Assembly (NCBI RefSeq): GCF_040938485.1
Contig: NW_027270892.1
Location: 1,922,001 to 1,986,000 of the forward strand
DNA: 64,000 nt
Origin: Diadema antillarum
Taxonomy: Eukaryota
Direction: 5' to 3'
The translations under genes were made by a program, and so were the position numbers. How positions within the stretch are numbered: position 1 is the first letter of the stretch; every line of letters starts with the position of its first letter. Under the pieces are notes generated by a model. It did not search any database and was not told the origin of the DNA. It saw only the letters and a list, made by a program, of their open reading frames with translations. Positions 26,601-48,239 of this stretch are shown piece by piece.

Positions 26601-29600
26601 AAAATTTTTGCAAAGAAGCAATTAGATTTTTCACGAAAATGAACAATTTGGGGTAACATTAATGATTATGCAATGCTAGACAGCCATCTACAAGTTGTGT
26701 TGACATGTATCATGTACATGTTACTATGATGGTCACTTTAAATAGAGAATGCTCTTTGAATAAAACATTGTTGTTTTTCAACTGAATGGCCTATTATTGA
26801 TTAGAAAAGATAACAGCTCTAAAATACCATTGAACATTGTGTTTCATACCCTTTACATGGCCAGCAAAACCGTGGGGGCCGTGGGGGCTTGGGCCCCCAC
26901 ATTTTTTGTGCACAATACAAAGAAATGCATAAGGTGTTATCACTTTGGGCCCCCACAATTTTTTTAACCCGGAAGTACGTAAGTGGCACTAAATAGAAAT
27001 AGAGATCTTGAAGTGTGAGCCCGGTACCTAGGTTATGTTTTTCCACTGAGGACCTCTTTGTGTGTGTGTGTTTTTTTTTTGCTTGTCAGCTGAACAGTGA
27101 AAAACCCAGAAATGGAAGGGGAGAGATGAGCTGAGCCGAGGACCTTTTTTTTTTTTTGCTTGTTACATTGTAGCTCATGAAACCCAGAAGTGGGCCCCCA
27201 CACTTTTGAAAACGCTGGGTTAAGCCTGCATGTACAAACATGTATAACTAGACAAAACTGACATACACAAGTGTGTAACCATTGCATACTTGCCAACATT
27301 TTGAAATCCTGAAGAGGTAGATTTTGCGAGGGAGCGAAGCGACCAAGCCCGAGCACGCTTGCGCGCGAGGGGGGGGGGTGTGGGAGGGGGGTGTCCCCCC
27401 TCCCGCGGTGTGGACTTTTTTTGTTTTTCAATATCAAAATATGAGATTTGGTGCACGCTTTTTAACCTTTTTAAAGGATTCTTGGTATTGATTAAAAAAA
27501 AGCATATAATCCATGTAAATCTATGAACTATTTTGTAGACTATGAAAATAAAATCAGACATATTGGTAAATAACTTTTGTAGGCTAAGCATATCAATGTG
27601 AAAAATCAAACATATCGTTATCACAAGTTAGATATAAAAATACATGTACGTTTAATACAATCACGTACAATGTACGTACACGGCCGGCCGGCTGGGATCA
27701 TGCCACGCCGTATGCCGCATCGGCCGCACCACGCACACGTGAGCTACCAAAACATTACTATTAAAGCATGGTTCTAGCTACACGTACAATGTACACGTGT
27801 ACAGTAAGTCTTGCACGCACGTAGATATGATAGACTAGTGCGCCACTGCAGTGTGCATACATGTGTGCATATTAGAAGGCTGAATACGGCGTTTTTGAGA
27901 AACGAGTTCCTTGAAATTATTATTAGTATTCTAATTACAATGTACTACAATTTTTGTAGCTTATTTTAGGGAATCAACGCACAATGAAGGGAAAATATGA
28001 CTTCTATTTCATTTTATGGTAGGTTTGCTACTAAATCGGTAGATTGGAAGAGAAAATCGGTAGCCGGTCAAAATCTCTAAAAAAGCGGTGGTCTACCGCC
28101 CAAAGCGGTAGAGTTGGCAAGTATGCCATTGAGTCAAGGGAATATTAAAGGTTCTACTGTTGAATGGCCCTCTACACCAAGTCTTAGACTTTATATGACA
28201 TCATCATACAAACATGTACATACAGTAGGTATTTTAAATTCAGGTGGTGTCTAGGTAATGATTTTCCTGGAACCGAGTGTAAGCCGATTGCCTGCAATGC
28301 ATTTTGTGATAGAGCCCTTACGCCACAGTAATTGCTAATTTGTAATTGTATTTGTATACTGACTATGACTTCTGCTTTACAAAATTTCATTTGCATATGG
28401 GTAGCCATACTGTCCTGTACTAGACTCCCGTTTGTTCAAGCATACATCATATACAATATAATTATGTTCGTCGACTACTGTATTTCCTCGCGTCGCTATG
28501 CTACATTGAATCATTTAATACTAAAACGCCGTATCTGAGGCTGGTTACTCAGTATGCAGTAGGCCTAGGCAGGACGCCGTGCGTGTATGATGCGATTGAC
28601 ACACAAGTGCGTGTGTATCTGTTATCATCAGCTACCCGCGCGCGCGGTTCCTAACTACACACACCTTCCTATACTGAGTACCCAAGGAGGTACAGTGTAC
28701 TTGCCTAGTACCTCCTTGCTATACCATTATCACATGTACACGTTTAGCGCTTCAGATCTTACGTACCGAGTGTTCTCACGTTGCTGGCAACGTGATTGAT
28801 CGCGACTCCGCATAGCGCATGCGTAAAATGCAGACACAATTTCTACGCAGTGTACAGTATCCAGTAGTACGAACGTACAATACACAATACGTATGGATCG
28901 GCATCATAAACAAGTAGGTTTGAAGCATGAGACCGGCCATGCCAAAGTACAGGTGCAGGTACGAGCGAGCGCGAGCACTTGTACTTGCAAACATAATTCA
29001 CACTTCCAATTCTGGCTGGTACAATTTATAACAGAACCAGGCACTACAATTAACATGCCCATATAGTAAGCAGAATCATCCCCTTCGCATAAATGCAGTG
29101 CACAGTTACACATGTATTTAATACTTGGCTTGATAATCGTAACAGTGCTGAATCGTAATCGTATCTCATCAAACTCCGATCATCAACTTGAATGGCGGTA
29201 ATATTTAATCAACACAGTAACAGTCGATCAGTCTACAGCTGTATGTAGATACGATTGAGCTCATTTGCTATTTGCTTCGCTCTCCTGCTCTTTACTTGGC
29301 ATTCACCTTACCAAAATTAGACTCGGATTAAAAAAAAAGGATAAAACAATTAATAAAGGTCCTATAGATCTATAACGTGAAACATTACTAAAAGGGAATT
29401 GAGAAGCTACTTAGTACTGTAGATCTACCGTCAAAACGACAAACGTTATAACTTTAATAGCGTGTTGGACCTCAACCACCCGTCGCTGTAAATTTATAGA
29501 AGTCGCCCAACAACTGTCCAATGACAATACGAAATGTCATCTCTAACGTTAGCCCGACCAGACACTGTTACGCTATGCGAAAACAGAGTCTGACGAGCGC

Positions 29601-31523
29601 GGCATGCAGCCTCAAAGTGAGGAACCTCAATACAACTACAAAACTTAGGAAAATGTATACTTTTCTTCTTTACACAGAATACTTTACTCACGTTAAATGC
29701 ATGTTTCTATTACAAAAGAACAGTTTGCCACACTGGGTCCATGGAGACAACTTGCGAATAGTCCGAGGAAAAAATAAATGACACTTTCTACCGCAAATCC
29801 TGACCATCTCAGGTTCGTCGTTGCAGGATTCAAAATGGCGCATTGACCTCTGCGAATTATGCGCATGCGTGACCGGAAGTGCTCCAGAGCGAGCGCGCGG
29901 CGTGTGCGTTGAAAGTGTCAAACAAACCTTGGCGTCTGCTACAAAATTAACCGTGGTATGGAGCTCAATGCTCCTCGCCCGACCAGACGCCAGCCGCCGT
30001 CGTCAAGCCCAGTACAGTTTATAGCTGTATAGTGTTGTACTAGTATTCTAAACCGTGCTTCGCATTGCGTCTGCATGGTGGTCGACAGCAGGATGACAGT
30101 CAGCAGTTACCATGCTCCATGCCATGCCCCACGCCGTGCAACTTTGCATTTCCTGTAAAAACGCGTTCACGCCGAAAAATGGTGGTTTTTACAGACATAG
30201 AGTGACAGCAGTAGCGTCCCCACGGACGTTTACTGCTGTCTATCGAAAGCCACATCATTATCATCGGAACGCTTTCATTTGCAGGTCATGCTACAAGTTC
30301 CTGATCCCTAAAACGCGCCCTGTGAAACCCGCGAAGGCAGGGAGCAAACGGGGTCATCGGAGGACATTGAAAACTCCAAACCCACATGGTGAGGATAAAT
30401 ATCACGGAATTCTACTAGACCCGTGTGTCAAAACATGACGTTAATTCCAGACCCTATATATAATTGTCATGACGCAACCATTATCCCAAAGGGCGCATTT
30501 GCATTTCCGTCAACTGTTTCGATGCACATTATATGAATGTTTTTTTGAAATAGAATGAAAACAAAACAAATCTTCCTTGCCGAAGATGTAGGCCCTATTG
30601 CAAAAATTAATGAGAACTCTATCAAAACATGGGTTCACGCTTTTTTCAACACTAATTCTACTCGTATAGGGGGTCGTGAGCTCTTACGTTATTTCGCTTA
30701 GATATGAGCGCATCTCATTTCACGTTGTATGTCGAACTACACTGTACTCTCATTCAAGACGGTGGTAACGTGGATATTTCGCCCCATGATGAGACGGAAG
30801 GGGAGCCATCCAGCACTCCGTCAGCAAAGCGGCAAGCATTGTTCCCCACACCGGGTCCGCTTCTCCGTTCCCAAGATCGCCAGATGAACCCGCTATGCCC
30901 CGTTGTGCCAGGTATACTCAATACCTTAATTATTCCAGTACTAAGACATACTAAAATTAAGACCAGCAAACACCACCCCCCCCCCACACACACACTAAAA
31001 TAATAATGATAAAAAACAATATATGTATATTTTATGTATATAAATCAAAACATCCACACAATGTACCAAGACCGTGTAGGGGGAGTGCTTGCGCCCATTT
31101 TTTTCCTTTTAATTTTGTTTAAACAAAAAAAAAGGGGGGCGCGCACGATGCCCCCCCCCCCCCATCCGCTACTGCTCAGAAACAGATTTTCTTTTCCCTT
31201 GTTTATAAGACACAGTTTAAGTTACATTTATGCAAGAGAATTAACGTTCTAAGTCATTGTTCTCAAGCCATTTGTTATGGGGAATTCAATAACAATCAAA
31301 ATCACTTCTTGTGTATGTAAAAAATACTCTCAGAAGATAAAGATGTAACAATAACAAATAGAAGAGGTGGTAATAGGGCCTATATTATGAAAGAATATAG
31401 CACCTACCATATCTGCAGTTAAAGGGAACGCAAACCCAAAGAGTGATGTGGATGGAGTGAAAGCAGCATTATTAGTAAAACACGTCAGTGAAAGTTTGAG
31501 GAAAATATAACAATCGATGCAAT

Positions 31524-31569
<46 letters not shown>

Positions 31570-31878
31570 GAGAGTATTAAGGAGGCGGTAGACGTTGCTT
31601 AATTGAATCCTCACAAGTGATTTTACTTCAAGCTTTCGGGCTTTCTGCCCTTTGTCAAGACTGAGGACAAATCGGACAAAATACAAAACATGGATATCAT
31701 ATATACAAACAATAATGATCAAAACAATAGTAAAAATAATGATAATAATATTTTTGTATATGTAAATATACAATACTGTATATACAGAAGCAACGTCTAC
31801 CGCCTCCTTACTCTCGTTACACACATTCCAAAAAGATGCGACGACCCAGGGGTTCAGTAGCTGAAGACGCACGTCTCA

Positions 31879-31917
<39 letters not shown>

Positions 31918-34900
31918 AGTTTTGGTGTTGGAACCGCTGTTTGAGGAGATAAGAAAAGGTTATGACGTATGAGTGGACAACAAAATACAGAACATAATGA
32001 AAAATATTCAACAAAAATTCCCTTTTTAAGTACTATGAAAGAGCACTCCACTATTTACGCTTTCAGAAAGCAGGAAGAATAATTAATACCCATAACATAT
32101 GTCAGTACAGCAAGTTGATGGAATTTCTAATTTGCATGAAAACAAAATTGTGGGATTTTCTTTTAATTTCCTTATTTTGTTGTCTACTCATACGCCATAA
32201 CCTCTAGTAGTCTCCTCATCCAGCTGTTCCAACAACAAAACTTCAAAATGTGTTACTTTTGCATCGATTGTAAGATTTTCTTCTGATGTGTTCTATAATG
32301 CTACTGCTTTCGCTCAATCCACGTTGCTCTTTGGGTTTGCGTTCCCTTGAGCCTACACTAATCTCGTCATCAATTAGATGCAGCCTAGATGTAATTACCA
32401 GAATTGTAGGCCTTAATTGACAAGCGGTAGAAGGGTATCTTGAATTTTCCCGACTCTCTTCTTTAATTTCATTTCATGTATTTTATTTATTTTTTTGGTG
32501 GGGTGGGGGCAAGTTTCACAAGATACCTGTATTCTTTAATATGGACTACACATAATGTGTTTGTTGTTGAGAGAGTGATGTTCGCCCTAAGAAATAACGA
32601 TAGAAAAATCCTAGGAATGGCATCATTTTGGTCTTCGCTAGTTTTGATTATAGTAGACTAAGCGCCCAACGAGATAACAACATCGAGCTGTATGGTGCCA
32701 TTGTCGTTATTTTTGTTCTTGAGCTGAGATTAGTCTCCATTTAGGCACATACGATTTCCATAGCCCAGATCATACTGGCTAAAAGCGACAGTGATGCTGA
32801 AGGTTTGACATTAATGCTATTTGTCATCGAAAAGTCCGTGGCGTATCTGCAAATATCCTCACCTGATTTCGATCTTATACAGACCAAAGAAAACAGACAG
32901 TTTTCAATTCTATTGTCTGATCTACTATTAGCTATACGAAAGAAGCATCATCTAGCATCAAAGCGCATCAAGGCTTAAATTCGATAACATGTATAAAGAT
33001 GTATTTAGACATGTATTAAAAGTAGAAACATTACAGAATCAATCTAGACAGCTTATTGAAAATCGTTGTGAACATGCATAACAAACGCCAATTATCAATT
33101 TCACAACAGATGGCGAAATTGCCCACGAGAACGTAGGTCCGCCGACTTCACCTACAGCTCTTCTTCAAAGAAAACAAAAAGATGCCGGCGTGCAGACAAA
33201 CTATCCGCCCTCATCATTTCTTCCACACGATGGAGAGCAGTCACTCAGCAGTGAACTGGACGATGATCTTCCTTGTCTACTACCTGAATGCACCGCCGGA
33301 CCAAAAACGCCGAAAGAGACGGCTATAGACTACATCGAAGTATCGAAGTATCGGCTTGCGTTTAGACTCTTATGTTTGAGTTACCCAGCGGCAAAGAAGG
33401 CACTGTCAACAGTGACGCAGGAAATTATAAAGGAAGAAGTAAGAGCACAAAATAAAAACAAAGTGCTACTGTATAGTCAAACAAATTTACATGCGTCTCA
33501 TTTTGATGAACATGCACAAGACAGCAATACTTATTCATTTTGCTCCAGTCGGCCATTTCTTTTCAGTCAAGAACATCCTTGTCATGGAAATTACATTCAT
33601 AATAATTGGAATTCTGTTTTACGTGAATTGGGTGATTACAAGATTGTAATGATTCTAACTTCGGTCATGTCATTATTTGGCTGCAATTTAGTGAAAATGG
33701 TACTTGCCCTGCCGTTTGTTTGTATTTATCAGGTTGGTTTTTTTTTTTTGGACATGTTTTATAGATGTGGTAGGTTCCTACGTGGATGTAGTTTGTCTTA
33801 AAAACAAATACTTCACTTAATAGTTGATATAATAAGTCAGTAGTTCACAATGGCAGCTCCCATTCAGTATGCTTTCCATATTTTCACCGACGTCAATTTG
33901 CTTCTTCTTTTTTATTCTACATAGGTGAAATCCATGAAGCGAAACAACCACAAAAAGAGTGGTTTCAGCCAGCCAATATCATTGGAACGGGTTGAAGAAT
34001 TCCGTTGGGAGAAACTCCTTGATGAAACGGAAAAGGTCATGCCGGTTGCCATTAGCTCCATGTCAGCCATGATGCCATCTATCAAAGAGGTCAAGGCAAA
34101 CAACGGAAAAATCAAAGGAAAGAAAGGCGCAAAGAGGTAAAGAAGAAACGATAGACAAATCATATAAACATGTAATTTAGTGTGGATAACAAATTTGTTA
34201 TTATTATTCGCAAGGTCAGTTTTAATTGCGTTAGCAAAATCATTATGTTTATGTATATTATTATATATTTGTGTGTGTGTGTGATAGGGAAAAAATGATT
34301 CTTGCATGGATATGCCAAAAAACCGCTTGCTCGAGATATAAAATTGCAAAGCACCTTCCAAATGAATTCGTTATAAAGTGGTGACACATTAAATGAATTA
34401 TTCAGAGTTTCAGAAGGCGCAATGAAGGATGAAAACTGTGACATGCCGTTTCATATTCTGCATTATCTCGATGCACATACAAATAGTTGTTATATTCGCA
34501 ACTTGCTGTTCTCTACTTTGCCCCTAACCAGAATTTTCAAGTAATTATACTCTTTTGCGAATTGATCGCCTCTTGTACATAGTTATTAGTAAACGAAATG
34601 TAAATTAGGGAAAAGAAAACAATAAGGATATAAACAGAATGGGGTGCAATATGAATATTATTTAATGAGAACTTGAAATGCGCGGACGTGAGTCCCCAAA
34701 GCGCAGTGCAAAAAAAAATATATATATATAAAAAAAAATAACTTCAAAATTTCGAATCTTCACATTCATGCATAAGAAATAAACAATAGGAGGAACAAAA
34801 TAACTTTTGTTTATCCACCAAGGTGTGTTTCTGACGATGAAGCCAAGGTATTCATTACTCGACGACTGGGTCAAATGGTAGCAATCGGAATGTTCTCGCA

Positions 34901-37900
34901 GGCACCACGCATATTCAAGTTTGTGCAGACATGCATGGGCATCGAGCTATGGCGGCAAGGAGTGTCCCAGAAGGTGTTCAAGACACTGAATCATAGTGGT
35001 ATCACCATCAACGCAAATACCGTGAGGTTACACGTGGATGTTGTCGCGCAAAATCATGACCAGCAGCTGAAAGAGTGGAAGAAGACGGTCGAGGTGATGC
35101 GCTCGTGTGTTCCATTATTTTACACTCTTGTTTCTAATTTAGACCCAATTGTTTTACAGCTAATGTTAAACCAGGGAAGTTGAAAGGTAACGTTGAGAAT
35201 GCACTCAGGAATCCCATAGGAAATACTGAACAAATAGCAACGTACATCTACCTCAATTCTTGGAACTTTGGACTACAAGTACTACTAAAAGGGGCCCAAA
35301 AAATAATAACGTAGAATACTAGAATGAAAAGTTTGGTATTGATCAAAATTACCATCCTTAGTGGATAGATAATGATATATTACGCTCTGCCTATATTTTC
35401 CCCGTTGTATTTTACCAGTTGCATGTTGAAAATATTGTTATTGCGTGTTTCAAGACCTCCTGTCCATGCGTTACGTGATCCACTGACTCAACTCATGCAC
35501 ATACATGGTATTTGTTAATTTACTCCACAAAAGAAAAGTGAAAAAAAGGGGAAAAAAATGTATTACTTTTAATTGGCAAAATATCCCTCCACACAGGAAT
35601 TGCCAACGAAGACAACTCGCCGGAAGCTAAAATTCAGTCCTTCTGCTCCAACGTTTGGGCTGTGCATTGATAACGTGCAGAAGGGAACAGAATCAAAGCA
35701 CCAAGGACTGACACGGGGTAACAAGTTCTTCCTGCAAACCATGTGCTATGCGGCCAAAGACAGGGTGCCACCTCCGATGTCTTCATCCACAGTGCTGGAT
35801 GCCGAAACCCTGGACCCCTTTGTGTTCTTGCCCTCTCCGGACGTCATGGCCAGGCACCGAATGCGCCTAGTGGATGTAGTGGCCAGCATCATGGGGAAGC
35901 ATATGACGTACTTGGAGGATTTATCACGCCACCTCCCCATCACCCAAGAGCATGAAGAGAGTGCCGCTATGTCGAAAAAGTCTGAAATGGTAAGGGAATT
36001 TGTGGAGGCCCAAGCTCCATCGATATGATTGTTGATATCAATAAATTGAGAAAATTTCCATAAGTTATTAATCAAGGTTTCAATATTGGTTAAAAGAAGA
36101 ATCAAAACATAGCTTTCTGGCATACATTAAAAGACAAGCTATTCCTCGATTTAAACAGTAGGACGGCGTGCCCCTCAACCACAATAAGAAAATTGTCCGA
36201 AGATAAATTTAAACTGTCAATTCACTTTTAAAATTGAAAAATTATATGACAATACTTTGAGGGGACTCATATATTTGCCATTCGGGTAATGTAAACGTCA
36301 ATTTTATCCCTGTCCTAGGTGACATTGGGTGTTGTAAACGCTAATCCCAGCACAACACAAGGGATGGTAACAGTGTTACAGCATCTGCAGCAGTATGTTC
36401 CCGAGAAGAGGGGAAGCCCCATTCAGACCCTCGTCAGCGGCGACGGATTGACCATCGAGCGCATCCTACATGCTCAGCGGGCGAGATCGAATGGAGAGAA
36501 CTGGAAGGCCCGACTGGATGCATTCACTCCGGCACCCCAGGAATTTCACAAGGAAATTCTACTTCTGCAGGTATGTCTAACTCTCGTGAAATAAAAGCTA
36601 TGAAAGAATAGACACGAACAACTGATTAATTTCACCATGTTATTTATTATCTTCGCTCCATCCAAGCGAAGAATGATTACGTAAAGCCTGCATTGTACTG
36701 ATAGTGTACAAAGTTGTTTGGCCTATGTTTGTTTTGACACATTATGATCAAAATGTTATTGGTACTACAAAAGCTGCTTCATAACAATGTTTTCTGAAAT
36801 TTTTCTTTCGAATCAAAATATAGACGTTACCATAAGAACTGCTTCCCACATTATTGATAGACAGATATTTCGTGTCAGGTCCATTACAAGTAATACTCCG
36901 ATCTACGTTACACAACTTTGATATCATCAGTTTGTCTGTACTATGTGACATTTCCCAGAGACAATCGAGAAAGGACGAATGAATAATACCGAGAACAATT
37001 ATGTCTGTTCTTTAACGAACACCGGCCACGCGTTGATACAGCTACGAAGCATGATACACAAACAGATGTTAAAGTCATTATATAGTTTTGGTAGAGAACT
37101 AACTTCAAGTTTCTAACATTTTTTTGGGCGACAAAATGCGAAGCAAATTTTGGAATATAAAAGAGCATGTAATTCCAAGAGAATTTACGTGTTTTTTCAT
37201 GAAAATTGGTCATTATATGACTGAGTCACCACAAACAGCAATCCTAATAAAAGGTGGGATGGCTTTGTTCTACGTTGTTTTTGGATGTCTCAGCCATTCC
37301 AAAACAGATTTTGATCGAATGAACTTTCAATTCCTCTTAGACGTAGATATACTCTGTACTCTTTCGTGAAGTGCATGATTTCTCGATATCTCGCAAAAAG
37401 GTGAAAGCCCAATCCTCAGTTCCACCAATATGCCAAACCATCCCTTAACAGAGTGACTGTTTCTGCTAACTAATTATTCAAAAGAACCTATCATTTCAAC
37501 ATAATTTCCTCCTTGTCAAGGACTCAAACAACGTCTTCTTTCGAGGGAAAAGCATTTCTGCCAAAGGGACAATCGCACAGTTGAAGTACGATTACAACCA
37601 CAACTCTTTCCGGAAAGACGTTATGCAAAATGTTCAGCATACCTGGGATATGTATGAGGTAAGACGTTTCATAATTAGCAATTTTAGAGTGGAATGTAGG
37701 GATGACAAGACAGGGATAGGTCACAACCTGTATCTATAGTGTGTAATAGAGGGTGACAGTGTATTTTTGCTCTAATTTCAAAGAAAATGAAACATAATGA
37801 AATGGATGCAACGGAATTTATATAGTATACTCAGTATAGTAAAGCGAGATTAATGATGCATAGGGCAGAAAATGGGGAATCACAAATTTAATGAATGGTA

Positions 37901-40900
37901 GCATCATATTGCATTGTGAATGCATGATATACGCGTAAAGTATATTCATTCTTGTGCCAATTTTCGTGCTGAACAGTTCGTGACAGAGGGATACACGCTC
38001 CTTTGCGCCCTTAAGTTCTGTGGAACATCGTCTCTAAATGAGGTCCCTTACACTTTTCCGGTTGACGGCAGCAAAATGGAACAGCTACAGTGGGTCAAGG
38101 GTGTGGCTCAACAAGTCGTGGACTTCGTCTACCATGAACCAGACAAGTCATCAATACAAGTTGCAGCAGAGGCGTACAAAGATGACGTGGGAGAAGAAAC
38201 AGAGGATGCTCTGGCGTACTGTCACTGTAAAACTGGTTAGTACCCTATGGCAGTACTCCTACTATAAATCACTTCCCCACCATGATTTAAGGTTTGCTTG
38301 TTTTGTCATGTAACGTTAAGTTATCATTCAGAATAAGGATAAACAACCCCCCGCCCCCCCCAAAAAAAAAAACAACAACAACAAACAAACAAACAAACGA
38401 ACTGGTTAGTACCCTATGGCAGTACTCCTACTATAAATCACTTCCCCACCATGATTCAAGGTTTGCTTGTTTTGTCATGTAACGTTAAGTTATTCAGAAT
38501 AAGGATAAACAACCCCCCGCCCCCCCCAAAAAAAAACAAAACAAAACAAAACAAAAACAAAACAAAACCAAAAACAAACGAACGAACAAGCAAACAAAAC
38601 AAAACAAAATTGAAAAAAAGAAAAAAATTCCATGGCGACCGCAATACATCCACTACATATTTATTTATTTATTTATTTATTTGTTTATTCATTCATTTTT
38701 GTACAATACACACTGCCATTGCCACAGGAAGGCGACAATCTCAAATGAACGGCAAATAAACAATATCCGGTACACTATGATATTGTACACAGATTTTCGT
38801 GACATTGTTGAGCGGCATAATATGGAAACAGACAAATCTAATTACATGTATTCTCACTTGACCGTTCTGACTGCATGTATATGATCCCAAACTTTCCATG
38901 TATAATCGCTGAGTGGTAATGCATGTATGAATTCCAAGTCCAACAGGACTGATAAGCGTATATATTCATTTTTTTTTTCAGTATATGGAATAGCGTCACC
39001 CGAGCATAAGCTAATCCAATTTCGATACTTTGTTAACATTGACGTAAGGGCTCAAAACTGCTCTTAGATACATGAACGGTACATTCAGGTACCGCATTGT
39101 AGGCATAAAGCGGAAAAATGAGAGGAAACAAGTAAATGTGCTCAGGAGTGTACTCTTAGTGTAAATATTTCGATTGAACCGCAGTTTGCATAGTTTACAG
39201 AAAAATTCATGTATAATTCCGGAATAAGAACATACATGTACTTTGAAACTTACATCATATCGACATAGAAAATCTGGTAATTGTTCATGTTTCTAATCTT
39301 CTCGCCGATTTTGATTATGTGACATGTGCATGAATCCTTTCTCAATTATCTGTGTAGAGAAAGACGAGGAGATGGTTCAGTGCTGCAGTTATGCATGCCA
39401 CAAAGCCTGGTTTCATCTGGGTTGTGTCGGATTAGCATCTGCTCCAGATGACGACTGGTACTGCAGCGCCGATTGTGAAAGCAGTCCAAGCTACGTCTAC
39501 TGTGTGTGTAAGCTGAAAGTTGATCCAGAAGGCGGTACAAGAATGGTACAGTGTGCTTTGCAGCGGAATTGCAAGGGTCATGAATGGTATCACTACAGAT
39601 GCGTTGGGCTCCAGGTCACCGATGTACTACCGGGTGAGAAGAATTATGTTCGTGCATAATAAATGTGGAGATCTATGGACGGTGCCAACGATTTATTTAC
39701 AAGCATGAGCTGTTTGTCTTGCGAACTGAATCAGGTAGAAAAATTCTCTCATTACAGCTTATTATCAAATATGCGATAAGTATTCAAGGATGGTGTTGTA
39801 ACACGCTTGATCTAGTACCCATTAAGGCCTATGGAAAAAGGTAAATACTATGTCATTTCACTGTTTCCTGAGACGTGATTTTTTATTACTGTAGACAAAT
39901 GGTACTGTGGAGAAGCATGTGCCCTTGACTCTGAAGACGACGACCATGTGCTGAATCACAGTAAGGCTATCACTCTGGAGGGACTGCGTCATCAGGCAAG
40001 ACGAGCTGCAGTGCGGGCTGGAAATGGACCCGTCATGGTTGACGACTGGAAAATTGATCTCCTATCGTTCTGGTCAAAGAGGCATCCGAAATACCTCATC
40101 AACGCCCACTACTTCCTGGCATGTGAGTCTAGCACAATGTTTCTGTAATAATATAATACAGACAGACATATATTTGAGATATTCAATCACCAGAGGAAAT
40201 AACAGTTCATTTCGGAGAAACTACAGGCCGAGTCTCTCGAGCAGAGATTGTTTTTGGAAAATGCAGATGACTGTCAAAGAGTATTTCAATCAGATTTTAA
40301 TATCTAGAATTTCATTCATTTTTTTTATATCTATTCCAGGTGTAGGAGGATTTGCTCCCCAAAACACACGGACTAGCTTGATCTGGAATAGGGTGATCAA
40401 CGTTGCTGGAAGACGTGGAGGAAACATTGGAATGGACCTTGCCACTGAGCACATCAACTTGGAGTACAAAGGTATTACGTGGTAGATGTGGGAAAATATG
40501 TGAAAATATGTGTGATTAATAATGTGTAATTATTTTTCTACCGATAGTGATACGCGATCTTTCACCATGGAGACGGTACTGTGAGCTGCGTGCATGATTT
40601 CGAATCAAATAGGTTAGTGAGAAGAGTCGTCTTGCCGGTATCGGTCATTTTTGCAAAAGCATGCCCGATTCTGAAACGATCCTTTCCTATCCTTTTCACC
40701 TTCCGCTCCCCGGCAACTGATGAAGAGGGCGGTGTTTTGGGACTAACCTGTCTTTCAATTTCAGTTTTGTTTTGTTTTTGTTTTGTTTTGCTAACTCCTG
40801 ACGGGGTGTCGCCGTTTATTTTGGCCAATGTTTTGGTATTTCATTTATATATAATTATATATATATATATATATATATATACAAACACTATATAATATGA

Positions 40901-43900
40901 ACATATTTATTCATTAATTTATGCATGTATTTCATATTCACCTTTTTTTTTGCAGAGACGATAAACCATTGTCGTGGAAATGTGACAGAGAGGCATGCCG
41001 ACCGATGTGCCAAGATGTCTGGCCCTTTCGGTCGGTACCTGGACGATATGTTCAGTGACGCCGGGATCGTGTCTATGAAAACCCCATCACGAAAAAGGGC
41101 AGAAAACCTGTACAAGCAGGACGTGCTGTCATTCGTCAGTGAGAATCAGCGAGCTGCGCTATTTGAGTACTTGCCCTTCAGAGAACACGATGGTTTCGAG
41201 GGTTTTGATGGCAGACATGTTGTGAAAGCCCCGTGTAAGCTTGGACAGAAGTTGAAGGCCCTTTCCAGAAGAATGGATGCACAACGCCGAACTGTACAAT
41301 TGTGTCGGAATACAGACTCTCACTAGGAAAGACCATGTTAGTGATTCACGGTGTCACAAACTGAGCAGCAGGGACCCACTTGCTCTCTCGTCTGCTCCAT
41401 GCCTGGTACAAACAATGCTTTTAATACAGACTGCCGGATGCAGCATGACAATTTGAGGATGTCGCTCATCTCATCATCAAGCCATCTCTTGTTGACGGAG
41501 CCTGGTGGAAGGTACATGATTGCTCTCCCCCGTCTTCCGTCACGGCCACAGCGTCCCGTCTCCTGCCAGTAACTAAGGACGTCGCTTGGCGGTCCCCAGT
41601 GAATGACAGTGTCCACATCCGGAACATCCACTCCAAGCCCGAAGGCAATGGTTGCGATCACGCAACGAAGTGTAGAGCCCTTGGAAGAAAAGTTCATGCT
41701 TATTCTTTCCTGACTGTCTATGTCCGTGGACGCATGAAACATTTCAGAGAGTCTGTTGTGCACAGTACATGGCTGTTCAGAACCTGTAGAGTGTCCATCT
41801 TTCTGCAGTGATTCATTGATCCAGAGATAAAGTTCACTGACGTGGTCGATATGTCTGTAGGAACAAAACAAAATGATGCCATGTGTCAACATTAAAGCAA
41901 TCTATTTTCTTCACATTTTCTAATTATCTTTTCAAACATAAATTATTGGTTATGAAGAAAATCTAATTTTAAGAAGAAACTGATTTTTCTTTCAAAGTTG
42001 ATTTTCAAAAGATGTAGGGCCTCAGGTGTAGGTCTTCATGCATTACGGTTCTCGTTTGCTTTATAGAAATTGTGGGTACCATATTAATGTATTTTCTGTT
42101 TATCCAAGGTAATGTGCCAAGTATACATGTATATTGGGTATTGGTATGGTCTTCATAATTTAGTTGACGTCGATAAAACGTTTAAAAACTATTTCGGCAC
42201 TCATCTTTAAACACCGCGCCACCAGAATTGATAAGTCATGCAAACAAAAATCGAAGGCTCGATTTTTAGTTTACTTACCGAGCATATATGATGGTTTTCC
42301 GGGCCCTGGTTCCTTTTTGCTTCAGTTCCTCGATGTACCATCCTAGAGCCTCTTGCTTATTGGGGACTCGAGCTATTTCTAGGTGAATGTTTGGCCTGCA
42401 ATATTTGATAAATGGTATATTTATGAGATGTAATATAGGTGTTCGTGAAACAAGTCTGAAGAAAATCATATTTCATAATTACTGTGATTTACAGCGTAAT
42501 TGACTGGCATTCAAATGTATCTATCGGAATCAAATCTCCCTTCAAGTTTACCAGGCCGAGTTCTTGCAGTGGTAAGTTTTCTCCCTTTAAAGTAAATTAT
42601 AATTTATATCAATATAAGTTATAGCTCATAGGAAAACGGGTTGTAATTTACTCTAAACCCAGATCTGGATCATGAGAACGAATGATGACTCCTTTTCATA
42701 TCAGGGAAAATATAATCGACCGGGCGAAAAAGAATTACATATAGCTTGTAGGCCTACATGTATTCGGATACATGAATTTCACAAACTACATAAAGACGGA
42801 AATAAATATTTGGAGAAATGAGTCGTTGTTTGTAGCTTACGGTATTAAAGGGAAGTAGTTGGCTAACAATTTAGAGCCGCGTGATAAAAACACACCGTGT
42901 GCATGTGTTCCCGCTTCAAAAACAACAATACATTGCATTAGGCACAACTGAGCCCACATGTTTTCCTTATGTATTACACAGGCGGCGGTATATGATAGGT
43001 GGGAGAAACCTTTCTTTTACCAGTTACTACGTTGGTCGTGCAGGTTTTATATGCTCCACGGGACATGTGTCGCTGACGTTCAACTTCAGTTATCTGTCTT
43101 AACATCGTGTTCGTGATGAGTGTTATCTGTGCACCGAAAACATTACATTATCATAGCTATAGTGTATCCACTACCAGTAGTAGGAGGATTTTGTTGTGCA
43201 CATACGTTTGTGATTACGTCACCTGCAAGTATACAGCCATGGCGAAAGAAAAAATAAATGGGGTATAAAATGCGGAAGTTCCACGTGTTGTTTTTTTCTA
43301 AAATCCGTGTCATCGCGCATTGAATTGTTGTTGCTGTTGTGTTTTTGTTTGCGTCTCAAAACCACCGTCTGATGACCACAGATGATTTAGTCATAGGTGA
43401 AAGTTGACATATTGGTATAAGCACAGCAGAAATAAGAATCGTTCATCTTGCGCATAACTCTTTAGCTGATTTTAGCGGGTATATGTCTTGAAGAGGAGAA
43501 GCGAGCAAAAGCCTTATACATGAAAGAGAAATATCGGCTGGTATTAATGCGATCGAAGTATCGGGAAAAGGGGAGGCGTCTGTCCACTTGAGGGCTATGA
43601 GCGGAGTAATTTACATGTTATATTTTTGGGACACTGATACATTTCATTTCAATGGATATAGTAGTGTTTCAAACTGACATTCGATGCCTCACATGCATGT
43701 GACTTGATCCCTGAGAACGAAAAAAAAAAGTATTAAAGGATTTTTTTTTTACTTCTGTTCATTACCAATAGATTTATGACATTCCGCGGATGTAACTAGT
43801 ATGAATGAATGAGGCGTCGATGTTAATAAATACCTGTCTGGAGATAAAGCGACGATTTTCACTTCCTCTCGTCGGAGACTCAGATTTTCGCACACAGCAG

Positions 43901-45903
43901 TAACCATTCTGTCAGTGCATGTAGCGGACAGCATTAAGACAGGGCATGTTAGTCTTGATCGCAAAGTATGAACTCTCAGGTACTCCTCTCTGAATGTCAA
44001 TCCCCTGCACATACACGACAGTTAGTCATAGATAGGAAGAACAGTACAATAACAATATTTTACTTCCGTTAAGAAAAAAGAAAGAAAGAAAGATTATGTC
44101 CGTATACAAGACAGAATGTAAACGGGTCTGATGATTTATCGCGTGTTTATTTCTGTAATGACTGTAGTGTGTACATGCAGTTACAACAAACATATAGTTA
44201 TAATCAAAAATCCGGCGATCAGTTAAATGTCCTAGCCATTTATCAATCAGAGCGCTAATAGTACAGAATATGTTCTATATAATTCTTTCATGTAGTATGC
44301 GTAGTTCCTTGCTTAGTTTGGTCACTATAGGCCCATCCTGTGCAAAATTCTAATGTCAAACATCTAGCAAGAAGTGAATCTCAGAAAGCATAACTACAGT
44401 TCCCTCTCACGTGCGCTTGTTTGAAATTTTGATATGCTATAAGGTCATCATCTAACAAAAAAATAAAAAAATAAACAGTTGCATGTTCGACCTCCCCTAT
44501 ATCAAATCAAATTTTAGCTAAATAATAACTATTTCGACATTCGCTACCCCAAAATCACCCAAAGAACGTGGATAGAAAACTTTCCTTTAAATCAGGGCAC
44601 GGTATACAGCCGATAGTTCTTCGGCAGCTGCGTGTTTTAATTATCTAGTCGTCCATATTCTGATTAGGGCCTGTCCCGACATGTCCATGTCCGGATAGGA
44701 GAGGTCGGACTGTATATTCTTCAATCTTTTACCTCAGCTGAAAATATGGAAATACTTTATTTCAGTTTAAATTGGGGTGTCTAGGACTCAGGCATTATGT
44801 TCCCATAACATCGCAAAACCATCTCATTTGATTCATTATACATGTATCTGCAATAAGTATGTTCATCGAGTACGTTCAATTATGGTACAGTTTGAAAAAT
44901 TAATCCAGTTAAGTTGTCAGCAGTTTTATGTATAACATTGCACTTTGGAAGGTATAACGTATAAACTTGCCATTTTGTCAGACAGTGAACTTCGTCAAGT
45001 ACAAGCAAGCAAATCCTTTCTTGGAACTTCCGCACCCATTTCCACCATTTCGGTGACATGATGGCCTCTGGGGACGTGAAAATGAGATCTCTCTCTCCGT
45101 TCATTAGATCTGATGGGTATATAAAGCGAGAAGTTGAAAGTAGAACATAATTCAAACATGCTAATCTACCATCAACTTATATCCCGATTTAGTGCTCATT
45201 AAGAAACGATTATCTTTATAACGTACACTGTATAATGGATACATAACGATTTCAACATTGATATTACGTGTTTTCACTTTCAAAACATATCGATAGATTT
45301 TTCTAACCCGAACTGATATCTAGTTGCTGATTATGATCATTCTATACGAGAGACAGTTTGATTCACCTATCCATTGCGGAGACTAAAGGCTGATTCCGGA
45401 TTAAACTTGTTCGACAAGAGTACAACTGTTTTGTACAGGCATTACGGGAAGAAGCGAGATACTCTTTGTGTGTATATCATACATGGGAAAGGGGGGGGGG
45501 ACAAAGGGTGCAAATTGTCAACAATTATTAGAAAATCGAGAGCAGACTGGGATCAATGAATTTGTTCAAGAACACAGGAAACTTCCGGTAGTTTTCTGAA
45601 TTACCATTTTCTGTCAACCGGTCCATATCCATCCCGGAATGACCGAGAATGGCCGCAGTTCTTATTCCATGTGACTCCCACCTTCGCATCTGATCCATCA
45701 TTAGACTTTTTAGCGGACTGACCACGAGGGTCATGTGTCTTGTCTCTGGATTCAACTGTCAAAAAAAGAAAAAAAAATCTACAATGAGCGACAATGACAT
45801 TGAGATACTGTGACTTTTCATATTGCTGTTATATTTCTATACATTAAAAGTAATGTTAAAATATATAGGCCTATATGTCCATATGACTCGTTATAGGGAT
45901 AAA

Positions 45904-45951
<48 letters not shown>

Positions 45952-46672
45952 GCACCTAGTAGTACAAACTGTTTTCTACTTTATACCTCCCATACACAGC
46001 TCCTTTCCACAGCGGTCCTTCCTAGGATTTATCGAACCAGTCACATTGTCACTTTCATAATGCTTATCTTCTTTTTTCCCCTCTATGATAAATATACGCT
46101 TGATTATATATAATTCTATGGGATTTTTCTCAATACGAATTAAAAGGGGGATCAGCACACAAATAGATTGATAAGTTTGTATCATCATTCAAATTAGCAT
46201 GCCATAAAAATTTATATCATAATGTATAATAGGTCTATTAATGTAATGAATGAATTATGTTGCCACTGTAGTGAATTAAGGTTTTGTAGGTAGGCCCTTT
46301 GGGCTTGTCAGATATTCAAGACCTAAAGACCTTTCCCTTATTCATTCATCCGTATTTCAGTAATTCAATGAGGAAATAATGATAACCAATAATCATCGAC
46401 TGCGAGAGCGCGAGGTGTTTATCAAGCCGAGCCGCAACTTGCCAAAGGCTGATAGACACCTCAAGGATCACCGATCGAGGTTATGTTAGATTTTATCCAT
46501 TACCCGAGAAATAGATGATTATTTGCTTTATATCCAACATCGATTTACAAAGTCGAACGAGATATGATTAAAGAAAAATATTCCATCAACCGTGCGGAAT
46601 ATGTCTACAACTCAGGCATGACAGGTTGCACCGTAAAACCACGGCAATCTGATAAATTAGAGTAGCGTCAAT

Positions 46673-46706
<34 letters not shown>

Positions 46707-47731
46707 AGAGTACACACAAAAAAAACAACAACGACAAATAAACAAAACAACACCTGCCTTGTCCATGAGTGGCCCAAAGAGAACGTACGGGATACTTTTC
46801 CCGTATGCGGTAGGCAAAATGGCCAAGGTGTGACTTCCTCCTGCCAGACTGTCGATTATCTCCACTTGTTTTGTTTTGAGTACGAAACTTTCACCGAACA
46901 TTTCGGTCGCTACTTTACGAATACAAGACTGATTATCCATGTCTAAAATGAGAAGAGTATGTGAGAAGTATACACAAAGGACGCAGGACAAGATGAAGAA
47001 GAAGAAGAAGAAGAAGAAGACAAGGGACCGGAGTGGACAGGTGTACGTGTACGCTTGAGAACGTATTACACAACCTATGGTATGACGTAAGTACTGCCTA
47101 ACGTCGTCTGCTTGTGGAGAGATCTTATGCGTGCGTGCGCGGCTTGAGTGTAGCAGCACGGTCGGCAGCGCGACCTTTTGAAAGGGCATTCACATCACGT
47201 GACCACCCGATATCTGAATTTGGCCTGGCGTGAAAGATTGTGTACCGTGTGGACATGCTGGATATGATGATCAATTTCGGTAAGTTTCATTACGTACATT
47301 TGAATACTGATAGCATCAGATGTAGAGTAAATATTGAAGAGTGTACTCGATGAGTTTGAGGTGACAAAAATGATCGTAAGTATCAAAAGTCAAAGCTATC
47401 GTGATACGATTACGTCGCTCTCCTAGTGGTTGGTGGTCGCACTCGTACAGCCCTGTCGCGACGTACCATGTACAGCGACTGGGCTGTGTATAGTTACTCT
47501 AACGTTAACATTTATTTGTCTGGAACTTGTCTATTCCGACAATTTATTGGTCAAGGTGGTTGAAACAGAAGAAGGCACTTAGATTGCCGATTTTTTTTTC
47601 TTCGTCTCACCTTTTTTCGAATCATTGTTGCCCGATGGAGGCTGCAGAAAACTCGGATTTTCCAGTAACGATTTTAGGGTTATCCCACGAATGTCGCTCA
47701 AGCGCTCTTCCATTCCCTCCATTAGATCCAT
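23244..47731 (-). CDS. HLF: PAR-bZIP transcription factor (HLF/TEF/DBP/Pdp1 family), 308 aa; join(complement 47611-47731, 25610-25978, 23244-23680)
   Basis: Exon 1 reads [28 protein letters not shown] (PAR-family TLxxLLENP-like motif) with donor G|GTGAGA. Exon 2 has [32 protein letters not shown]. Exon 3 has the PAR + basic + zipper region [54 protein letters not shown]. All introns are GT-AG and phase 1/1; total 927 nt with TAG stop. The symbol stands for the single invertebrate family member. Confidence 0.93.
24395..24783. mobile_element. Non-autonomous element with 6-bp TSD (IS3EU-like), in HLF intron 2
   Basis: CAGGGATGCCAAGT / ACTTGGTAGCTCTG with ACAGTG on both sides. Confidence 0.7.
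25610..25978 (-). CDS. HLF: PAR-bZIP coding exon 2
   Basis: Acceptor TCTTAG|GC and donor G|GTATGT; contains the conserved [10 protein letters not shown]...[10 protein letters not shown] block. Confidence 0.93.
26856..27229. mobile_element. Diverged copy of the 599-1147 MITE family, in HLF intron 1
   Basis: Shares GGGCCCCCACA..TTTTTTAACCCGGAAGTACGTAAGTGGCACTAAA..GAGATCTTGAAGT and the right-end CACTTTTGAAAACGCTG; TSD not recognisable. Confidence 0.7.
27285..28125. mobile_element. Non-autonomous element with 13-bp TIR and 6-bp TSD (IS3EU-like), in HLF intron 1
   Basis: CATACTTGCCAAC / GTTGGCAAGTATG with CCATTG on both sides. Confidence 0.78.
29975..30109 (+). mobile_element. 135-bp diverged Academ-type miniature nested at the transposase start codon
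   Basis: Starts TCGCCCGACCAGACGC and ends CAGTTA; flanks CAATGCTCC / CCATGCTCC (8/9). The last 25 nt match the big element's right end at 14/25 positions without gaps. Confidence 0.6.
30112..41326 (+). CDS. Academ transposase with two PHD fingers, ~1115 aa; join(30112-30388, 30702-30911, 33110-33438, 33925-34136, 34823-35093, 35597-35989, 36319-36570, 37521-37658, 37977-38235, 39358-39633, 39895-40122, 40340-40471, 40956-41326)
   Basis: All 12 introns are GT-AG with matching phases; 3348 nt, no internal stop. N-terminal CxxC...CxxC. Putative catalytic motifs CIDNV (exon 6), SGDGLTIER (exon 7) and DLATEHIN (exon 12). PHD1 [30 protein letters not shown]; PHD2 [28 protein letters not shown]. 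The first two exons are least certain (alternative ATG 30124, alternative acceptor 30759). Confidence 0.85.
31423..32347. mobile_element. Kolobok-like non-autonomous element in transposase intron 2, carrying a nested MITE
   Basis: TTAA|AGGGAACGCAAACCCAAAGAG ... CTCTTTGGGTTTGCGTTCCCT|TGAG; same family as 62276-62827. Confidence 0.7.
31567..31818. mobile_element. MITE with ~33-bp TIRs nested in the Kolobok-like copy
   Basis: AACGAGAGTATTAAGGAGGCGGTAGACGTTGCTT / AAGCAACGTCTACCGCCTCCTTACTCTCGTT; next to a (TA)n run. Confidence 0.7.
38231..38560. repeat. 169-bp tandem duplication starting at the exon 9 donor of the transposase gene
   Basis: AACTGGTTAGTACCCTATGGCAGTACTCC... occurs at 38231 and 38400. 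Confidence 0.85.
41338..46940 (-). CDS. RecQ-like superfamily-2 DNA helicase of the AcademH element, 425 aa; join(complement 46758-46940, 45605-45755, 44971-45109, 43834-44004, 42279-42395, 41338-41854); possible extra upstream coding exon 47075-47189
   Basis: Motifs I LPTAYGKS, Ia [69 protein letters not shown], and a C-terminal Cys cluster (CCSVC). 1278 nt uninterrupted when two GC-AG introns are used. Confidence 0.9.
46388..46522. mobile_element. Small palindromic repeat in a helicase intron (10-bp terminal IR plus internal hairpin); family unassigned
   Basis: AATAATCATC / GATGATTATT ends; internal GAGGTGTTTATCAAGCC ... GGCTGATAGACACCTC. Confidence 0.45.
47611..47731 (-). CDS. HLF: PAR-bZIP coding exon 1 (40 codons + 1 nt)
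   Basis: ATG at 47731-47729 with an in-frame upstream stop; [10 protein letters not shown] motif; phase-1 donor matches the phase-1 acceptor at 25979-25980. Confidence 0.88.
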
Positions 47732-48239
47732 GACTGCCAAAATCCGTCGATCAGACTCGTATTGTATTGTTCGTCGTTAGTAGTTTCTAGGTTGATGTCT
47801 GGCGCAATGACGTCTTTCTTTAATCCTAGCTGGTTACGCTGTAGAAAATCATTTGTTTCTCAATTCTAACTGTTACAGAGGACGAGGTAAGAAGGCAAAA
47901 TCACCCGTTTCTCGTCATAAAGATAGCTAGAAACACCAAACGAACGCAATGGATCATAAAACGCCCGCGGCCGCAGCATCAGCTCAATAAACTGCTTGTG
48001 TTGTGGGTGCACGGTGGCTTCCAGTCCTACGTCAAATGTGTGTAAACGACACTACATGTACTGTCCGGTGCGGCACTATCTTTGCGCGAGCGACCTCTCA
48101 TCCGTGGATGGGATACAAAGGCAATACATGCAAAGTGGTCGTTTGCCGAGTGTGTATGCGAATGGTAATCAATAAAATCCGTACTACTCAGTATAATACG
48201 TAAACAGTACACATCTGACAGATAGGGATCGGAGAGCCC

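What the first reader, a model, noticed from the sequence alone, without database searches (positions are those of the whole stretch)
47440..47496. Asymmetric termini: no true TIR pair, shared motif offset by one helical turn
Seen: the left end reads TAGCCCGACCAGACACTGT and the right end (reverse complement) reads TAACTATACACAGCCCAGTCGCTGTA. Only the terminal TA matches. AGCCC starts at position 2 on the left and position 12 on the right, a 10-bp offset. The ATOX1 miniature reproduces both ends independently; its longer spacer is explained by CTTTG x3 and TAGT x2 micro-duplications. Inference: the ends may pair by a spacer rule reminiscent of 12/23 RSS asymmetry, or be processed differently, possibly with the helicase. 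I cannot say whether other AcademH families have this end structure.
Basis: partly seen in the sequence, partly recalled or inferred. Interest (0 to 1): 0.78.

Follow-up and report, generated by a model that had tools for sequence, protein, structure and literature searches.

The report
Transposon with two unlike ends
An 18-kb jumping gene in a Diadema sea urchin really does have two different ends instead of mirror-image ones, and tiny derivatives carry the same unlike pair, but the proposed one-helical-turn spacing rule is not supported.

Summary
Window 29550-47496 is one 17,947-bp AcademH (PHD-type) transposon with a perfect 9-bp target duplication. Its left end (19 nt) and right end (26 nt) are not inverted copies of each other. 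Many contigs with unrelated flanks break off exactly at 47496. The same unlike pair recurs in the 103-bp miniature (55157-55259) and in three further miniatures of 53-86 bp in D. setosum. All six right-type ends I could inspect have a left-type partner. The last 26-52 bp sits at about 4,000 times single-copy k-mer depth.

The shared AGCCC with its 10-nt offset is expected by chance (p=0.30). A better shared feature is an imperfect 11-mer, CCAG-W-C-R-C-Y-GT. It lies 7 nt from the left tip and 14 nt from the right tip, at the inner edge of conservation (p about 0.02).

In the full-length element each end also has its own palindrome starting at nt 10. Two other TIR-less Diadema families and a S. 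purpuratus AcademH show the same tip-plus-palindrome layout (7 of 8 ends; background 1.7%).

S. purpuratus AcademH elements have true TIRs (321 bp perfect; about 123 bp), so the asymmetry is a Diadema peculiarity. I found no evidence for a 12/23-like rule or for a role of the helicase. Earlier notes of this scan had already flagged this element on this window, not on other DNA.

The parts
29541..29549 (.). Left copy of the 9-bp target-site duplication, CTCTAACGT
   Evidence: Identical to 47497-47505.
29550..29568 (+). Left end, 19 nt (TAGCCCGACCAGACACTGT). This is the minimal left end conserved in all miniatures.
   Evidence: Similarity among miniatures stops right after ...CYGT.
29558..29568 (+). 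Left copy of the imperfect 11-mer CCAGWCRCYGT, 7 nt from the tip
   Evidence: It matches the right copy at 9 of 11 positions (10 of 11 using the miniature's left end).
29559..29592 (.). Left subterminal palindrome: 11-nt arms (10 of 11 paired), 12-nt spacer, starting at nt 10 from the tip
   Evidence: z = -3.5, 0 of 200 shuffles fold as well.
29977..29990 (+). Internal direct copy of the left-end core, GCCCGACCAGACGC (14 of 14 with the miniature's left end). Possibly an extra binding site.
36319..40482 (+). Transposase exons (DUF6589 core with PHD fingers). The annotated product P0103 spans 30704-41323.
41341..47189 (-). SF2 helicase gene (DEAD and Helicase_C domains). Its start lies about 300 bp from the right end.
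47447..47487 (.). Right subterminal palindrome: 13-nt arms (12 of 13 paired), 15-nt spacer. The outer arm starts at nt 10 from the tip.
   Evidence: z = -3.9, 0 of 200 shuffles fold as well. Many contigs of other copies begin to match at 47445.
47471..47496 (-). Right end, 26 nt (reads TAACTATACACAGCCCAGTCGCTGTA from the tip). This is the minimal right end conserved in miniatures and the stretch of highest depth.
47472..47482 (-). Right copy of the 11-mer (CCAGTCGCTGT), 14 nt from the tip
47497..47505 (.). Right copy of the target-site duplication, CTCTAACGT
55157..55259 (+). 103-bp miniature with the same left and right ends. Its 9-bp duplication matches at 8 of 9 positions (55148-55156 and 55260-55268), and its right spacer is 17 bp longer.

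Best explanation
Window 29550-47496 is a single, recently inserted AcademH DNA transposon of the PHD-finger sub-lineage, in Diadema antillarum. Its two ends have diverged into distinct left-type and right-type sequences. The pair is functional: the element itself and its abundant 53-103-bp derivatives always combine one left end (19 nt) with one right end (26 nt) and make 9-bp target duplications.

The two ends share three things: the TA.C tip, an imperfect inverted 11-mer placed 7 nt (left) or 14 nt (right) from the tip, and, in full-length elements, a private palindrome beginning at nt 10.

Inferred mechanism: the transposase reads the short tip plus the inner 11-mer or palindrome rather than a long TIR. 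The transpososome is therefore built on unlike ends with unequal spacing, as in piggyBac, the P element, Mu or Tn7. Because each end keeps its own palindrome, the two ends were free to drift apart in sequence. Binding, cleavage and any role of the helicase are inferred, not shown.
For: - Boundaries and target duplication. Loose ends with unrelated flanks at exactly 47496 appear in three runs.
- Gene content and layout match AcademH. The 9-10-bp duplication is the AcademH hallmark (PMC10045372, quoting Kojima 2020).
- The same left/right pair occurs in independent insertions: the window miniature; D. setosum L008:40305-40357 with its paralog L007:85332-85384 (53 bp); L007:10386-10548, a 69-bp exact deletion derivative with a perfect duplication CACCACTGC; and L007:21440-21525. 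All 6 right-type ends in about 470 kb of Diadema DNA have a left-type partner.
- Summed k-mer depth at 47471 is 38,114 against 9.45 for the single-copy interior in X1, and it is higher still in X3.
- Similarity among the miniatures ends exactly after the 11-mer on both sides. An 11-mer match of at least 9 of 11 has p=0.02, and at least 10 of 11 has p=0.001. The pattern is enriched in the window, 11 hits against 3.6 expected.
- Palindromes start at nt 9-12 in 7 of 8 independent ends (F1 left and right, F2 left and right, M347 left and right, S. purpuratus L010), against a 1.7% background. F1 and M347 keep the pairing through different arm sequences. Many other copies begin to match at 47445, the base of the right palindrome.
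Against: - The shortest miniatures (53 and 69 bp) lack the second arm of each palindrome. The palindromes are therefore not strictly required, or those copies arose in place by internal deletion.
- The 11-mer is only modestly significant, and it was defined after looking at the data.
- Family F2 shows no comparable shared inner motif.
- Copy number is inferred from summed contig depth, which the tool warns is not a copy count.
- No binding or excision data exist.
- Kojima 2020 and Repbase could not be read, so AcademH ends may already be described there.
Confidence: 0.6

Rival explanations
1. The ends obey a 12/23-like spacer rule: a shared signal sits one helical turn further from the tip on the right, and only unlike ends synapse.
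For: AGCCC lies at nt 2 on the left and nt 12 on the right. AGCC lies at nt 2 and nt 11 in the related M347 MITE. All 6 inspected copies are left/right.
Against: A shared 5-mer is expected by chance in 30% of shuffles. The offset is 9 in M347 and absent in F2, and the better-supported 11-mer is offset by 7. The ATOX1 miniature has 17 extra bp in that spacer. One contig in organism C carries a right/right palindromic unit (record 25). On the left AGCC lies in the tip, while on the right it lies in the palindrome arm, so the two are unlikely to be equivalent sites.
Confidence: 0.1
2. End recognition is structural. Each end is recognised as an extruded hairpin or cruciform (a 9-nt tip plus a stem-loop), possibly opened by the element's helicase, so sequence symmetry between the ends is unnecessary.
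For: Palindromes lie at equal offset on both ends in F1 (nt 10 and 10) and F2 (nt 12 and 12), and at nt 9-10 in M347 and S. purpuratus L010. Pairing is kept through different arm sequences. All autonomous members encode a helicase.
Against: The 53- and 69-bp miniatures lack the private palindromes. S. purpuratus L009 has none. Hairpin-recognising transposons of the HUH type make no target duplication, whereas this element makes 9 bp like a DDE enzyme. A palindrome in duplex DNA serves equally well as a dimer-binding site.
Confidence: 0.2
3. The asymmetry has no function. The element is a decaying or chimeric copy whose original TIR was lost, or its boundaries are misplaced.
For: Only one autonomous copy exists in the assembly. 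S. purpuratus relatives have normal TIRs.
Against: The element has a perfect 9-bp duplication. The same left and right ends occur in at least four other independent insertions in two species. The right-end sequence is at very high depth, and the boundary at 47496 is exact in many copies. Two more Diadema families are equally TIR-less, each with several 97.5-99.8% identical copies and 9-bp duplications.
Confidence: 0.05

Closest known systems
AcademH DNA transposons, PHD-finger sub-lineage (Kojima 2020, Mobile DNA 11:15; paper not held, known through PMC10045372 and my own recollection of the abstract)
   Same: A DDE transposase (Pfam DUF6589) with PHD fingers, a separate SF2 helicase gene on the opposite strand, a 9-bp target duplication, an animal host and a low copy number of the autonomous element.
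   Different: There is no TIR beyond TA.C. The two ends are distinct left and right types, and very short (53-103 bp) non-autonomous derivatives are at high copy. I could not check whether the paper describes such ends.
S. purpuratus AcademH copies L010:9531-23731 and L009:1408-25026
   Same: The same gene layout (transposase on +, helicase on -, shown for L010), 9- or 10-bp duplications and a TAAC tip. L010 has a palindrome starting at nt 10.
   Different: They carry true TIRs: 321 bp perfect in L010 and about 123 bp imperfect in L009.
Diadema families F2 (L002-L005, about 20-22 kb) and M347 (347-bp MITE in L002)
   Same: TARC tips, a 9-bp duplication, no TIR beyond 5 bp, and a private palindrome at nt 9-12 of each end. 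M347 shares the left type (TAGCCC..AGAC) and the right type (TAACT..ACAGCC) with F1.
   Different: Different sequences. F2 shows no shared inner 11-mer.
piggyBac and P-element ends (my own knowledge)
   Same: These are eukaryotic DDE transposons in which an internal transposase-binding repeat lies at unequal distance from the two tips: 3 versus 31 bp in piggyBac, and 21 versus 9 bp in the P element.
   Different: Those elements still have perfect terminal TIRs of 13 bp and 31 bp. Here the terminal identity is only TA.C.
V(D)J RSS 12/23 rule, Transib and ProtoRAG
   Same: The idea of two classes of ends that differ in spacer length.
   Different: No heptamer/nonamer-like pair with two fixed spacers is present, the spacing difference is not one helical turn for the best motif, the superfamily is unrelated, and a right/right unit exists.
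Helitron and IS200/IS605 ends
   Same: Unlike ends with subterminal hairpins, and (for Helitrons) an associated helicase.
   Different: Those use HUH nucleases and make no target duplication. This element makes a 9-bp duplication and encodes a DDE-type enzyme.

Membership tests
AcademH | Academ-type DDE transposase | tested here: met
   Pfam DUF6589 matches the exon at 36319-36591 (E = 5.7e-10) and, weakly, 39955-40482. The annotated product P0103 carries DUF6589. Sea-urchin and amphioxus homologs were found. That DUF6589 equals the Academ core is inferred from context.
AcademH | Helicase gene inside the element | tested here: met
   Helicase_C (E = 4.6e-13) and DEAD domains on the - strand at 41341-47189. 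A 425-aa gene is annotated there.
AcademH | 9- or 10-bp target-site duplication (AcademX makes 3-4 bp) | tested here: met
   A perfect 9 bp at the 18-kb element, 8 of 9 at the miniature, and 9 bp at the D. setosum 69-bp miniature and at F2 and M347. The criterion comes from PMC10045372.
AcademH, PHD sub-lineage | PHD finger within the transposase | tested here: met
   PF00628 and PF23011 match 39315-39656.
Typical TIR transposon (as in S. purpuratus AcademH) | Terminal inverted repeats of 10 bp or more | tested here: not met
   Only TA.C is shared at the tips.
12/23-type paired-signal system | The same signal blocks at two fixed spacer lengths that differ by about one helical turn | tested here: not met
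   The AGCCC offset of 10 is at chance level (p = 0.30). The 11-mer offset is 7, the M347 offset is 9, and the miniature has 17 extra bp.
12/23-type paired-signal system | Only unlike ends are used together | tested here: inconclusive
   All 6 copies in the held DNA are left/right, but one right/right unit is seen in an organism C contig. Function is not testable with these tools.
Helitron / IS200-IS605-like hairpin-end elements | HUH nuclease and no target duplication | tested here: not met
   A 9-bp duplication is present, and the protein is DDE-type (DUF6589), not HUH.

The most novel reading that the evidence does not exclude
In Diadema AcademH elements the transposase, perhaps helped by the element's helicase, recognises each end by shape: a 9-11-nt TARC tip followed by a stem-loop-capable palindrome. 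It does not depend on a shared sequence. This would have let the two ends, and whole families, drift apart while staying mobile, and would have allowed 53-bp 'tip-palindrome-tip' units to spread to very high copy number, as the summed contig depth suggests.
Probability: 0.18. Interest if true: 0.7.

Novelty: new variant of a known kind. Interest (0 to 1): 0.5.

Why it matters
Almost nothing is known about how Academ transposases find their ends. This work defines a minimal left end (19 nt) and right end (26 nt), very short natural substrates (53-103 bp), a candidate 11-bp binding motif and a conserved tip-plus-palindrome layout. It also provides a natural contrast between TIR-less Diadema families and TIR-bearing S. 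purpuratus relatives. Together these make end recognition by a helicase-carrying DDE transposon directly testable. The finding also matters for annotation, because TIR-based MITE and transposon finders will miss these abundant Diadema elements.

Tried and rejected
- **Kojima 2020.** The paper could not be fetched by PMC id or by DOI. Other papers that mention Academ say nothing about its termini.
- **Protein search near the right end.** The 173-aa helicase first-exon ORF gave no hits.
- **Metagenome scan.** A scan for the right-end 22-mer returned nothing, so there is no urchin DNA in that collection. I did not use the second scan.
- **Other F1 autonomous copies.** The only annotated F1 protein, P0103, maps back to the window itself. 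L006 is the same locus.
- **L. variegatus L011 and D. setosum L012.** No helicase and no recognisable ends. The flanking inverted pair in L011 is an unrelated common repeat.
- **TSD-capture idea.** I considered that the right tip's extra 10 nt was a captured old target duplication. I rejected this because TAACT is the canonical tip in M347 and in S. purpuratus L010.
- **F2 copies lacking duplications.** This first impression was resolved. The apparent shared 'CC' belongs to the target, L004 has a perfect duplication, and the left flank of L002 matches the right flank of L005, which points to recombination between copies.

Full report
**What is at the coordinates**

The finding's 47440-47496 is the right terminus of a 17,947-bp element that spans window 29550-47496. 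The left string TAGCCCGACCAGACACTGT occurs at 29550 and, with one change, at 55157. The right string occurs once, at 47471-47496 on the - strand. The element is flanked by a perfect 9-bp duplication, CTCTAACGT.

A 103-bp miniature at 55157-55259 has the same two ends and a duplication that matches at 8 of 9 positions.

Inside the large element, the + strand carries a transposase (Pfam DUF6589 at 36319-36591 and 39955-40482, PHD at 39315-39656). The - strand carries an SF2 helicase (41341-47189). RefSeq-style annotation of the same locus (L006, 100% identical to the window) shows the same two genes inside an intron of a bZIP gene. Protein names identify the genome as Diadema antillarum.

A 9-bp duplication plus a helicase plus a PHD-bearing transposase is what defines AcademH and its PHD sub-lineage. 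PMC10045372 quotes Kojima 2020 for the 9-10-bp duplication, and the rest is my recollection of that abstract. The paper itself is not held.

**Is the asymmetry real?**

Yes.
- Local alignment of the left end against the reverse-complemented right end scores no better than shuffles or random genomic pairs (p 0.08-0.25).
- BLAST of 1.2 kb from each end finds nothing.
- The right boundary does not depend on this one copy. When contigs of four public runs were laid on 43000-48239, 19 contigs (X1), 9 (X2) and 1 (X9) ran on into mutually unlike sequence exactly at 47496.
- The interior of the element is single copy (depth 9.45 in X1), but summed depth rises to 38,114 at 47471 in X1 and to about 217,000 in X3, which is another species. 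The terminal 26 bp therefore belongs to a very abundant family.
- A second step is visible at 47445, where 18-27 contigs per run begin to match.

**Other copies**

Protein searches led to annotated loci of D. antillarum and D. setosum. In D. setosum I found three further independent F1-type miniatures.
- A 53-bp copy at L008:40305-40357, with a paralog at L007:85332-85384.
- A 69-bp copy at L007:10386-10548 with a perfect duplication, CACCACTGC. It is an exact deletion derivative, keeping 30 nt of the F1 left end and 39 nt of the right end.
- An 86-bp copy at L007:21440-21525.

Every one combines a left-type end with a right-type end. All 6 right-type ends in about 470 kb of Diadema DNA have a left-type partner. 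The right tip GGGCTGTGTATAGTTA is unchanged in these three D. setosum miniatures, and only the ATOX1 miniature is expanded.

**What the ends share**

The AGCCC pentamer (nt 2 on the left, nt 12 on the right) is what 30% of shuffled end pairs also show.

A better candidate is an imperfect inverted 11-mer, CCAGACACTGT (left, nt 8-18) against CCAGTCGCTGT (right, nt 15-25). It matches at 9 of 11 positions (p = 0.02), or 10 of 11 with the miniature's left end (p = 0.001). Similarity among the different miniatures stops immediately inside this 11-mer on both sides. That defines minimal ends of 19 and 26 nt. The pattern is also over-represented in the window, with 11 hits against 3.6 expected. Its distance to the tip differs by 7 nt between the two ends, not 10.

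**A second layer: private palindromes**

Folding each end as DNA shows a palindrome at both ends, and both start at nt 10.
- Left: 29559-29592, 11-nt arms, 10 of 11 paired.
- Right: 47447-47487, 13-nt arms, 12 of 13 paired.

Both fold far better than shuffles (z = -3.5 and -3.9, 0 of 200 shuffles in each case). The 47445 step in the contig data coincides with the inner base of the right palindrome.

**Generality**

A second AcademH family in D. antillarum, which I call F2, is 20-22 kb long. I found four copies at 97.5-99.8% identity in L002-L005.
- Its ends share only TAACC.
- It makes 9-bp duplications. L004 has TGTGGGCCC on both sides. The left flank of L002 equals the right flank of L005 on the same contig, which implies recombination between copies.
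- It has palindromes starting at nt 12 of both ends.

A 347-bp MITE, which I call M347, occurs twice in L002 with perfect 9-bp duplications. It has a left end of the F1 type (TAGCCC..AGAC) and a right end of the F1 type (TAACT..ACAGCC). Each end has its own palindrome, whose arms differ from those of F1 but still pair.

Two S. purpuratus AcademH copies, by contrast, have real TIRs.
- L010:9531-23731 has 321 bp of perfect TIR, a 9-bp duplication and the same transposase/helicase layout.
- L009:1408-25026 has about 123 bp of imperfect TIR and a 10-bp duplication.

The L010 TIR again shows a 9-nt TAAC tip followed by a palindrome at nt 10. Overall, 7 of 8 independent ends start a palindrome at nt 9-12, against 1.7% of random positions.

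The TIR-less state is therefore a peculiarity of the Diadema families, not of AcademH. It is also not tied to the helicase, which the TIR-bearing elements encode too.

**Interpretation**

Shown:
- unlike ends that are conserved and always paired left with right in the copies I could inspect;
- 9-bp duplications;
- minimal end lengths of 19 and 26 nt;
- the 11-mer and the palindromes.

Inferred: the transposase recognises the TARC tip plus the inner 11-mer or palindrome, and so builds an asymmetric transpososome. Known precedents, from my own knowledge, are piggyBac (3- versus 31-bp spacers) and the P element (21 versus 9 bp). Because each end carries its own palindrome, left and right could drift apart.

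Points against a strict reading:
- The 53- and 69-bp miniatures lack the second palindrome arms. In them the left and right 11-mers themselves form a single palindrome between two tips.
- F2 shows no comparable shared inner motif.
- The 11-mer was defined post hoc.

Points against a 12/23-like rule:
- The offset is inconsistent: 10 in F1, 9 in M347, none in F2, and 7 for the 11-mer.
- The ATOX1 miniature has a 17-bp longer spacer.
- One contig of a more distant species (X9, record 25) carries a right/right palindromic unit next to a 277-bp stretch that is 97.5% identical to the F1 right end.
- An unchecked note of this scan (s1-211246) also mentions a fold-back Academ made of two 3' halves.

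**Limits**

- Summed contig depth is not a copy count.
- The runs' organisms are coded.
- L006 contains letters under the window's masked N stretch (48240-48454). I did not read or search them.

**Verdict**

The specific helical-turn and 12/23 interpretation is not supported, while the broader idea of functionally asymmetric ends with unequal spacing is. This is a new variant of a known kind and is of moderate interest.

Noticed in passing
L002:6335-6708 and L005:30586-30603: Two different Academ-type elements sit in tandem on one 9-bp target: CTCTAGACC, then M347, then CTCTAGACC, then F2. The same 9-mer flanks the right end of the F2 copy in L005, about 170 kb away on the same contig. This suggests an inversion or recombination between F2 copies.
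   Followed up: partly
L007:10386-10548: An 85-bp F2-type miniature (10449-10533, duplication GGCTGTGTA) is nested inside the right tip of a 69-bp F1-type miniature (duplication CACCACTGC).
   Followed up: partly
L010:9531-23731 (S. purpuratus): A 14.2-kb AcademH copy with 321-bp perfect TIRs, a 9-bp duplication (GGGGTAAGC), and transposase and helicase genes. It looks like a recently active copy.
   Followed up: partly
window 29977-30035: An internal direct copy of the left-end core (GCCCGACCAGACGC) lies 428 bp inside the element. It is followed by AAGCCCAGTACAG and TATAGCTGTATAG, which echo words of the right end. These may be extra binding sites.
   Followed up: no
window 29479-29489 and 54968-54980: 11-mer-like or right-end-like fragments lie just outside both insertions: CCCGTCGCTGT 70 bp left of the big element, and TGTACAGCGACTG 190 bp left of the miniature. 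They could be decayed older copies or a sign of local targeting.
   Followed up: no
window 44575-44749, 46500-46674, 47025-47199: These stretches inside the helicase gene region have summed contig depth 20-160 times the single-copy level in X1, and far higher in X3. Other repeats are nested there or shared with non-autonomous families.
   Followed up: no
window 47222-47498 (run X9, record 25): A contig from a species whose host flank does not align at 80% identity carries this 277-bp right subterminal stretch at 97.5% identity. It is followed by a 59-bp right/right palindromic unit. This could reflect horizontal transfer or strong conservation.
   Followed up: no
L001 versus L007: A third DUF6589 family (P0012/P0077) lies in collinear, apparently orthologous regions of D. 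antillarum and D. setosum (about 90-97% identity over about 40 kb). Its gene models are very long and no helicase was detected nearby. It may be an old or domesticated copy.
   Followed up: no
L006:27537-27751: The fetched public locus holds letters where the window is masked with N (48240-48454).
   Followed up: no
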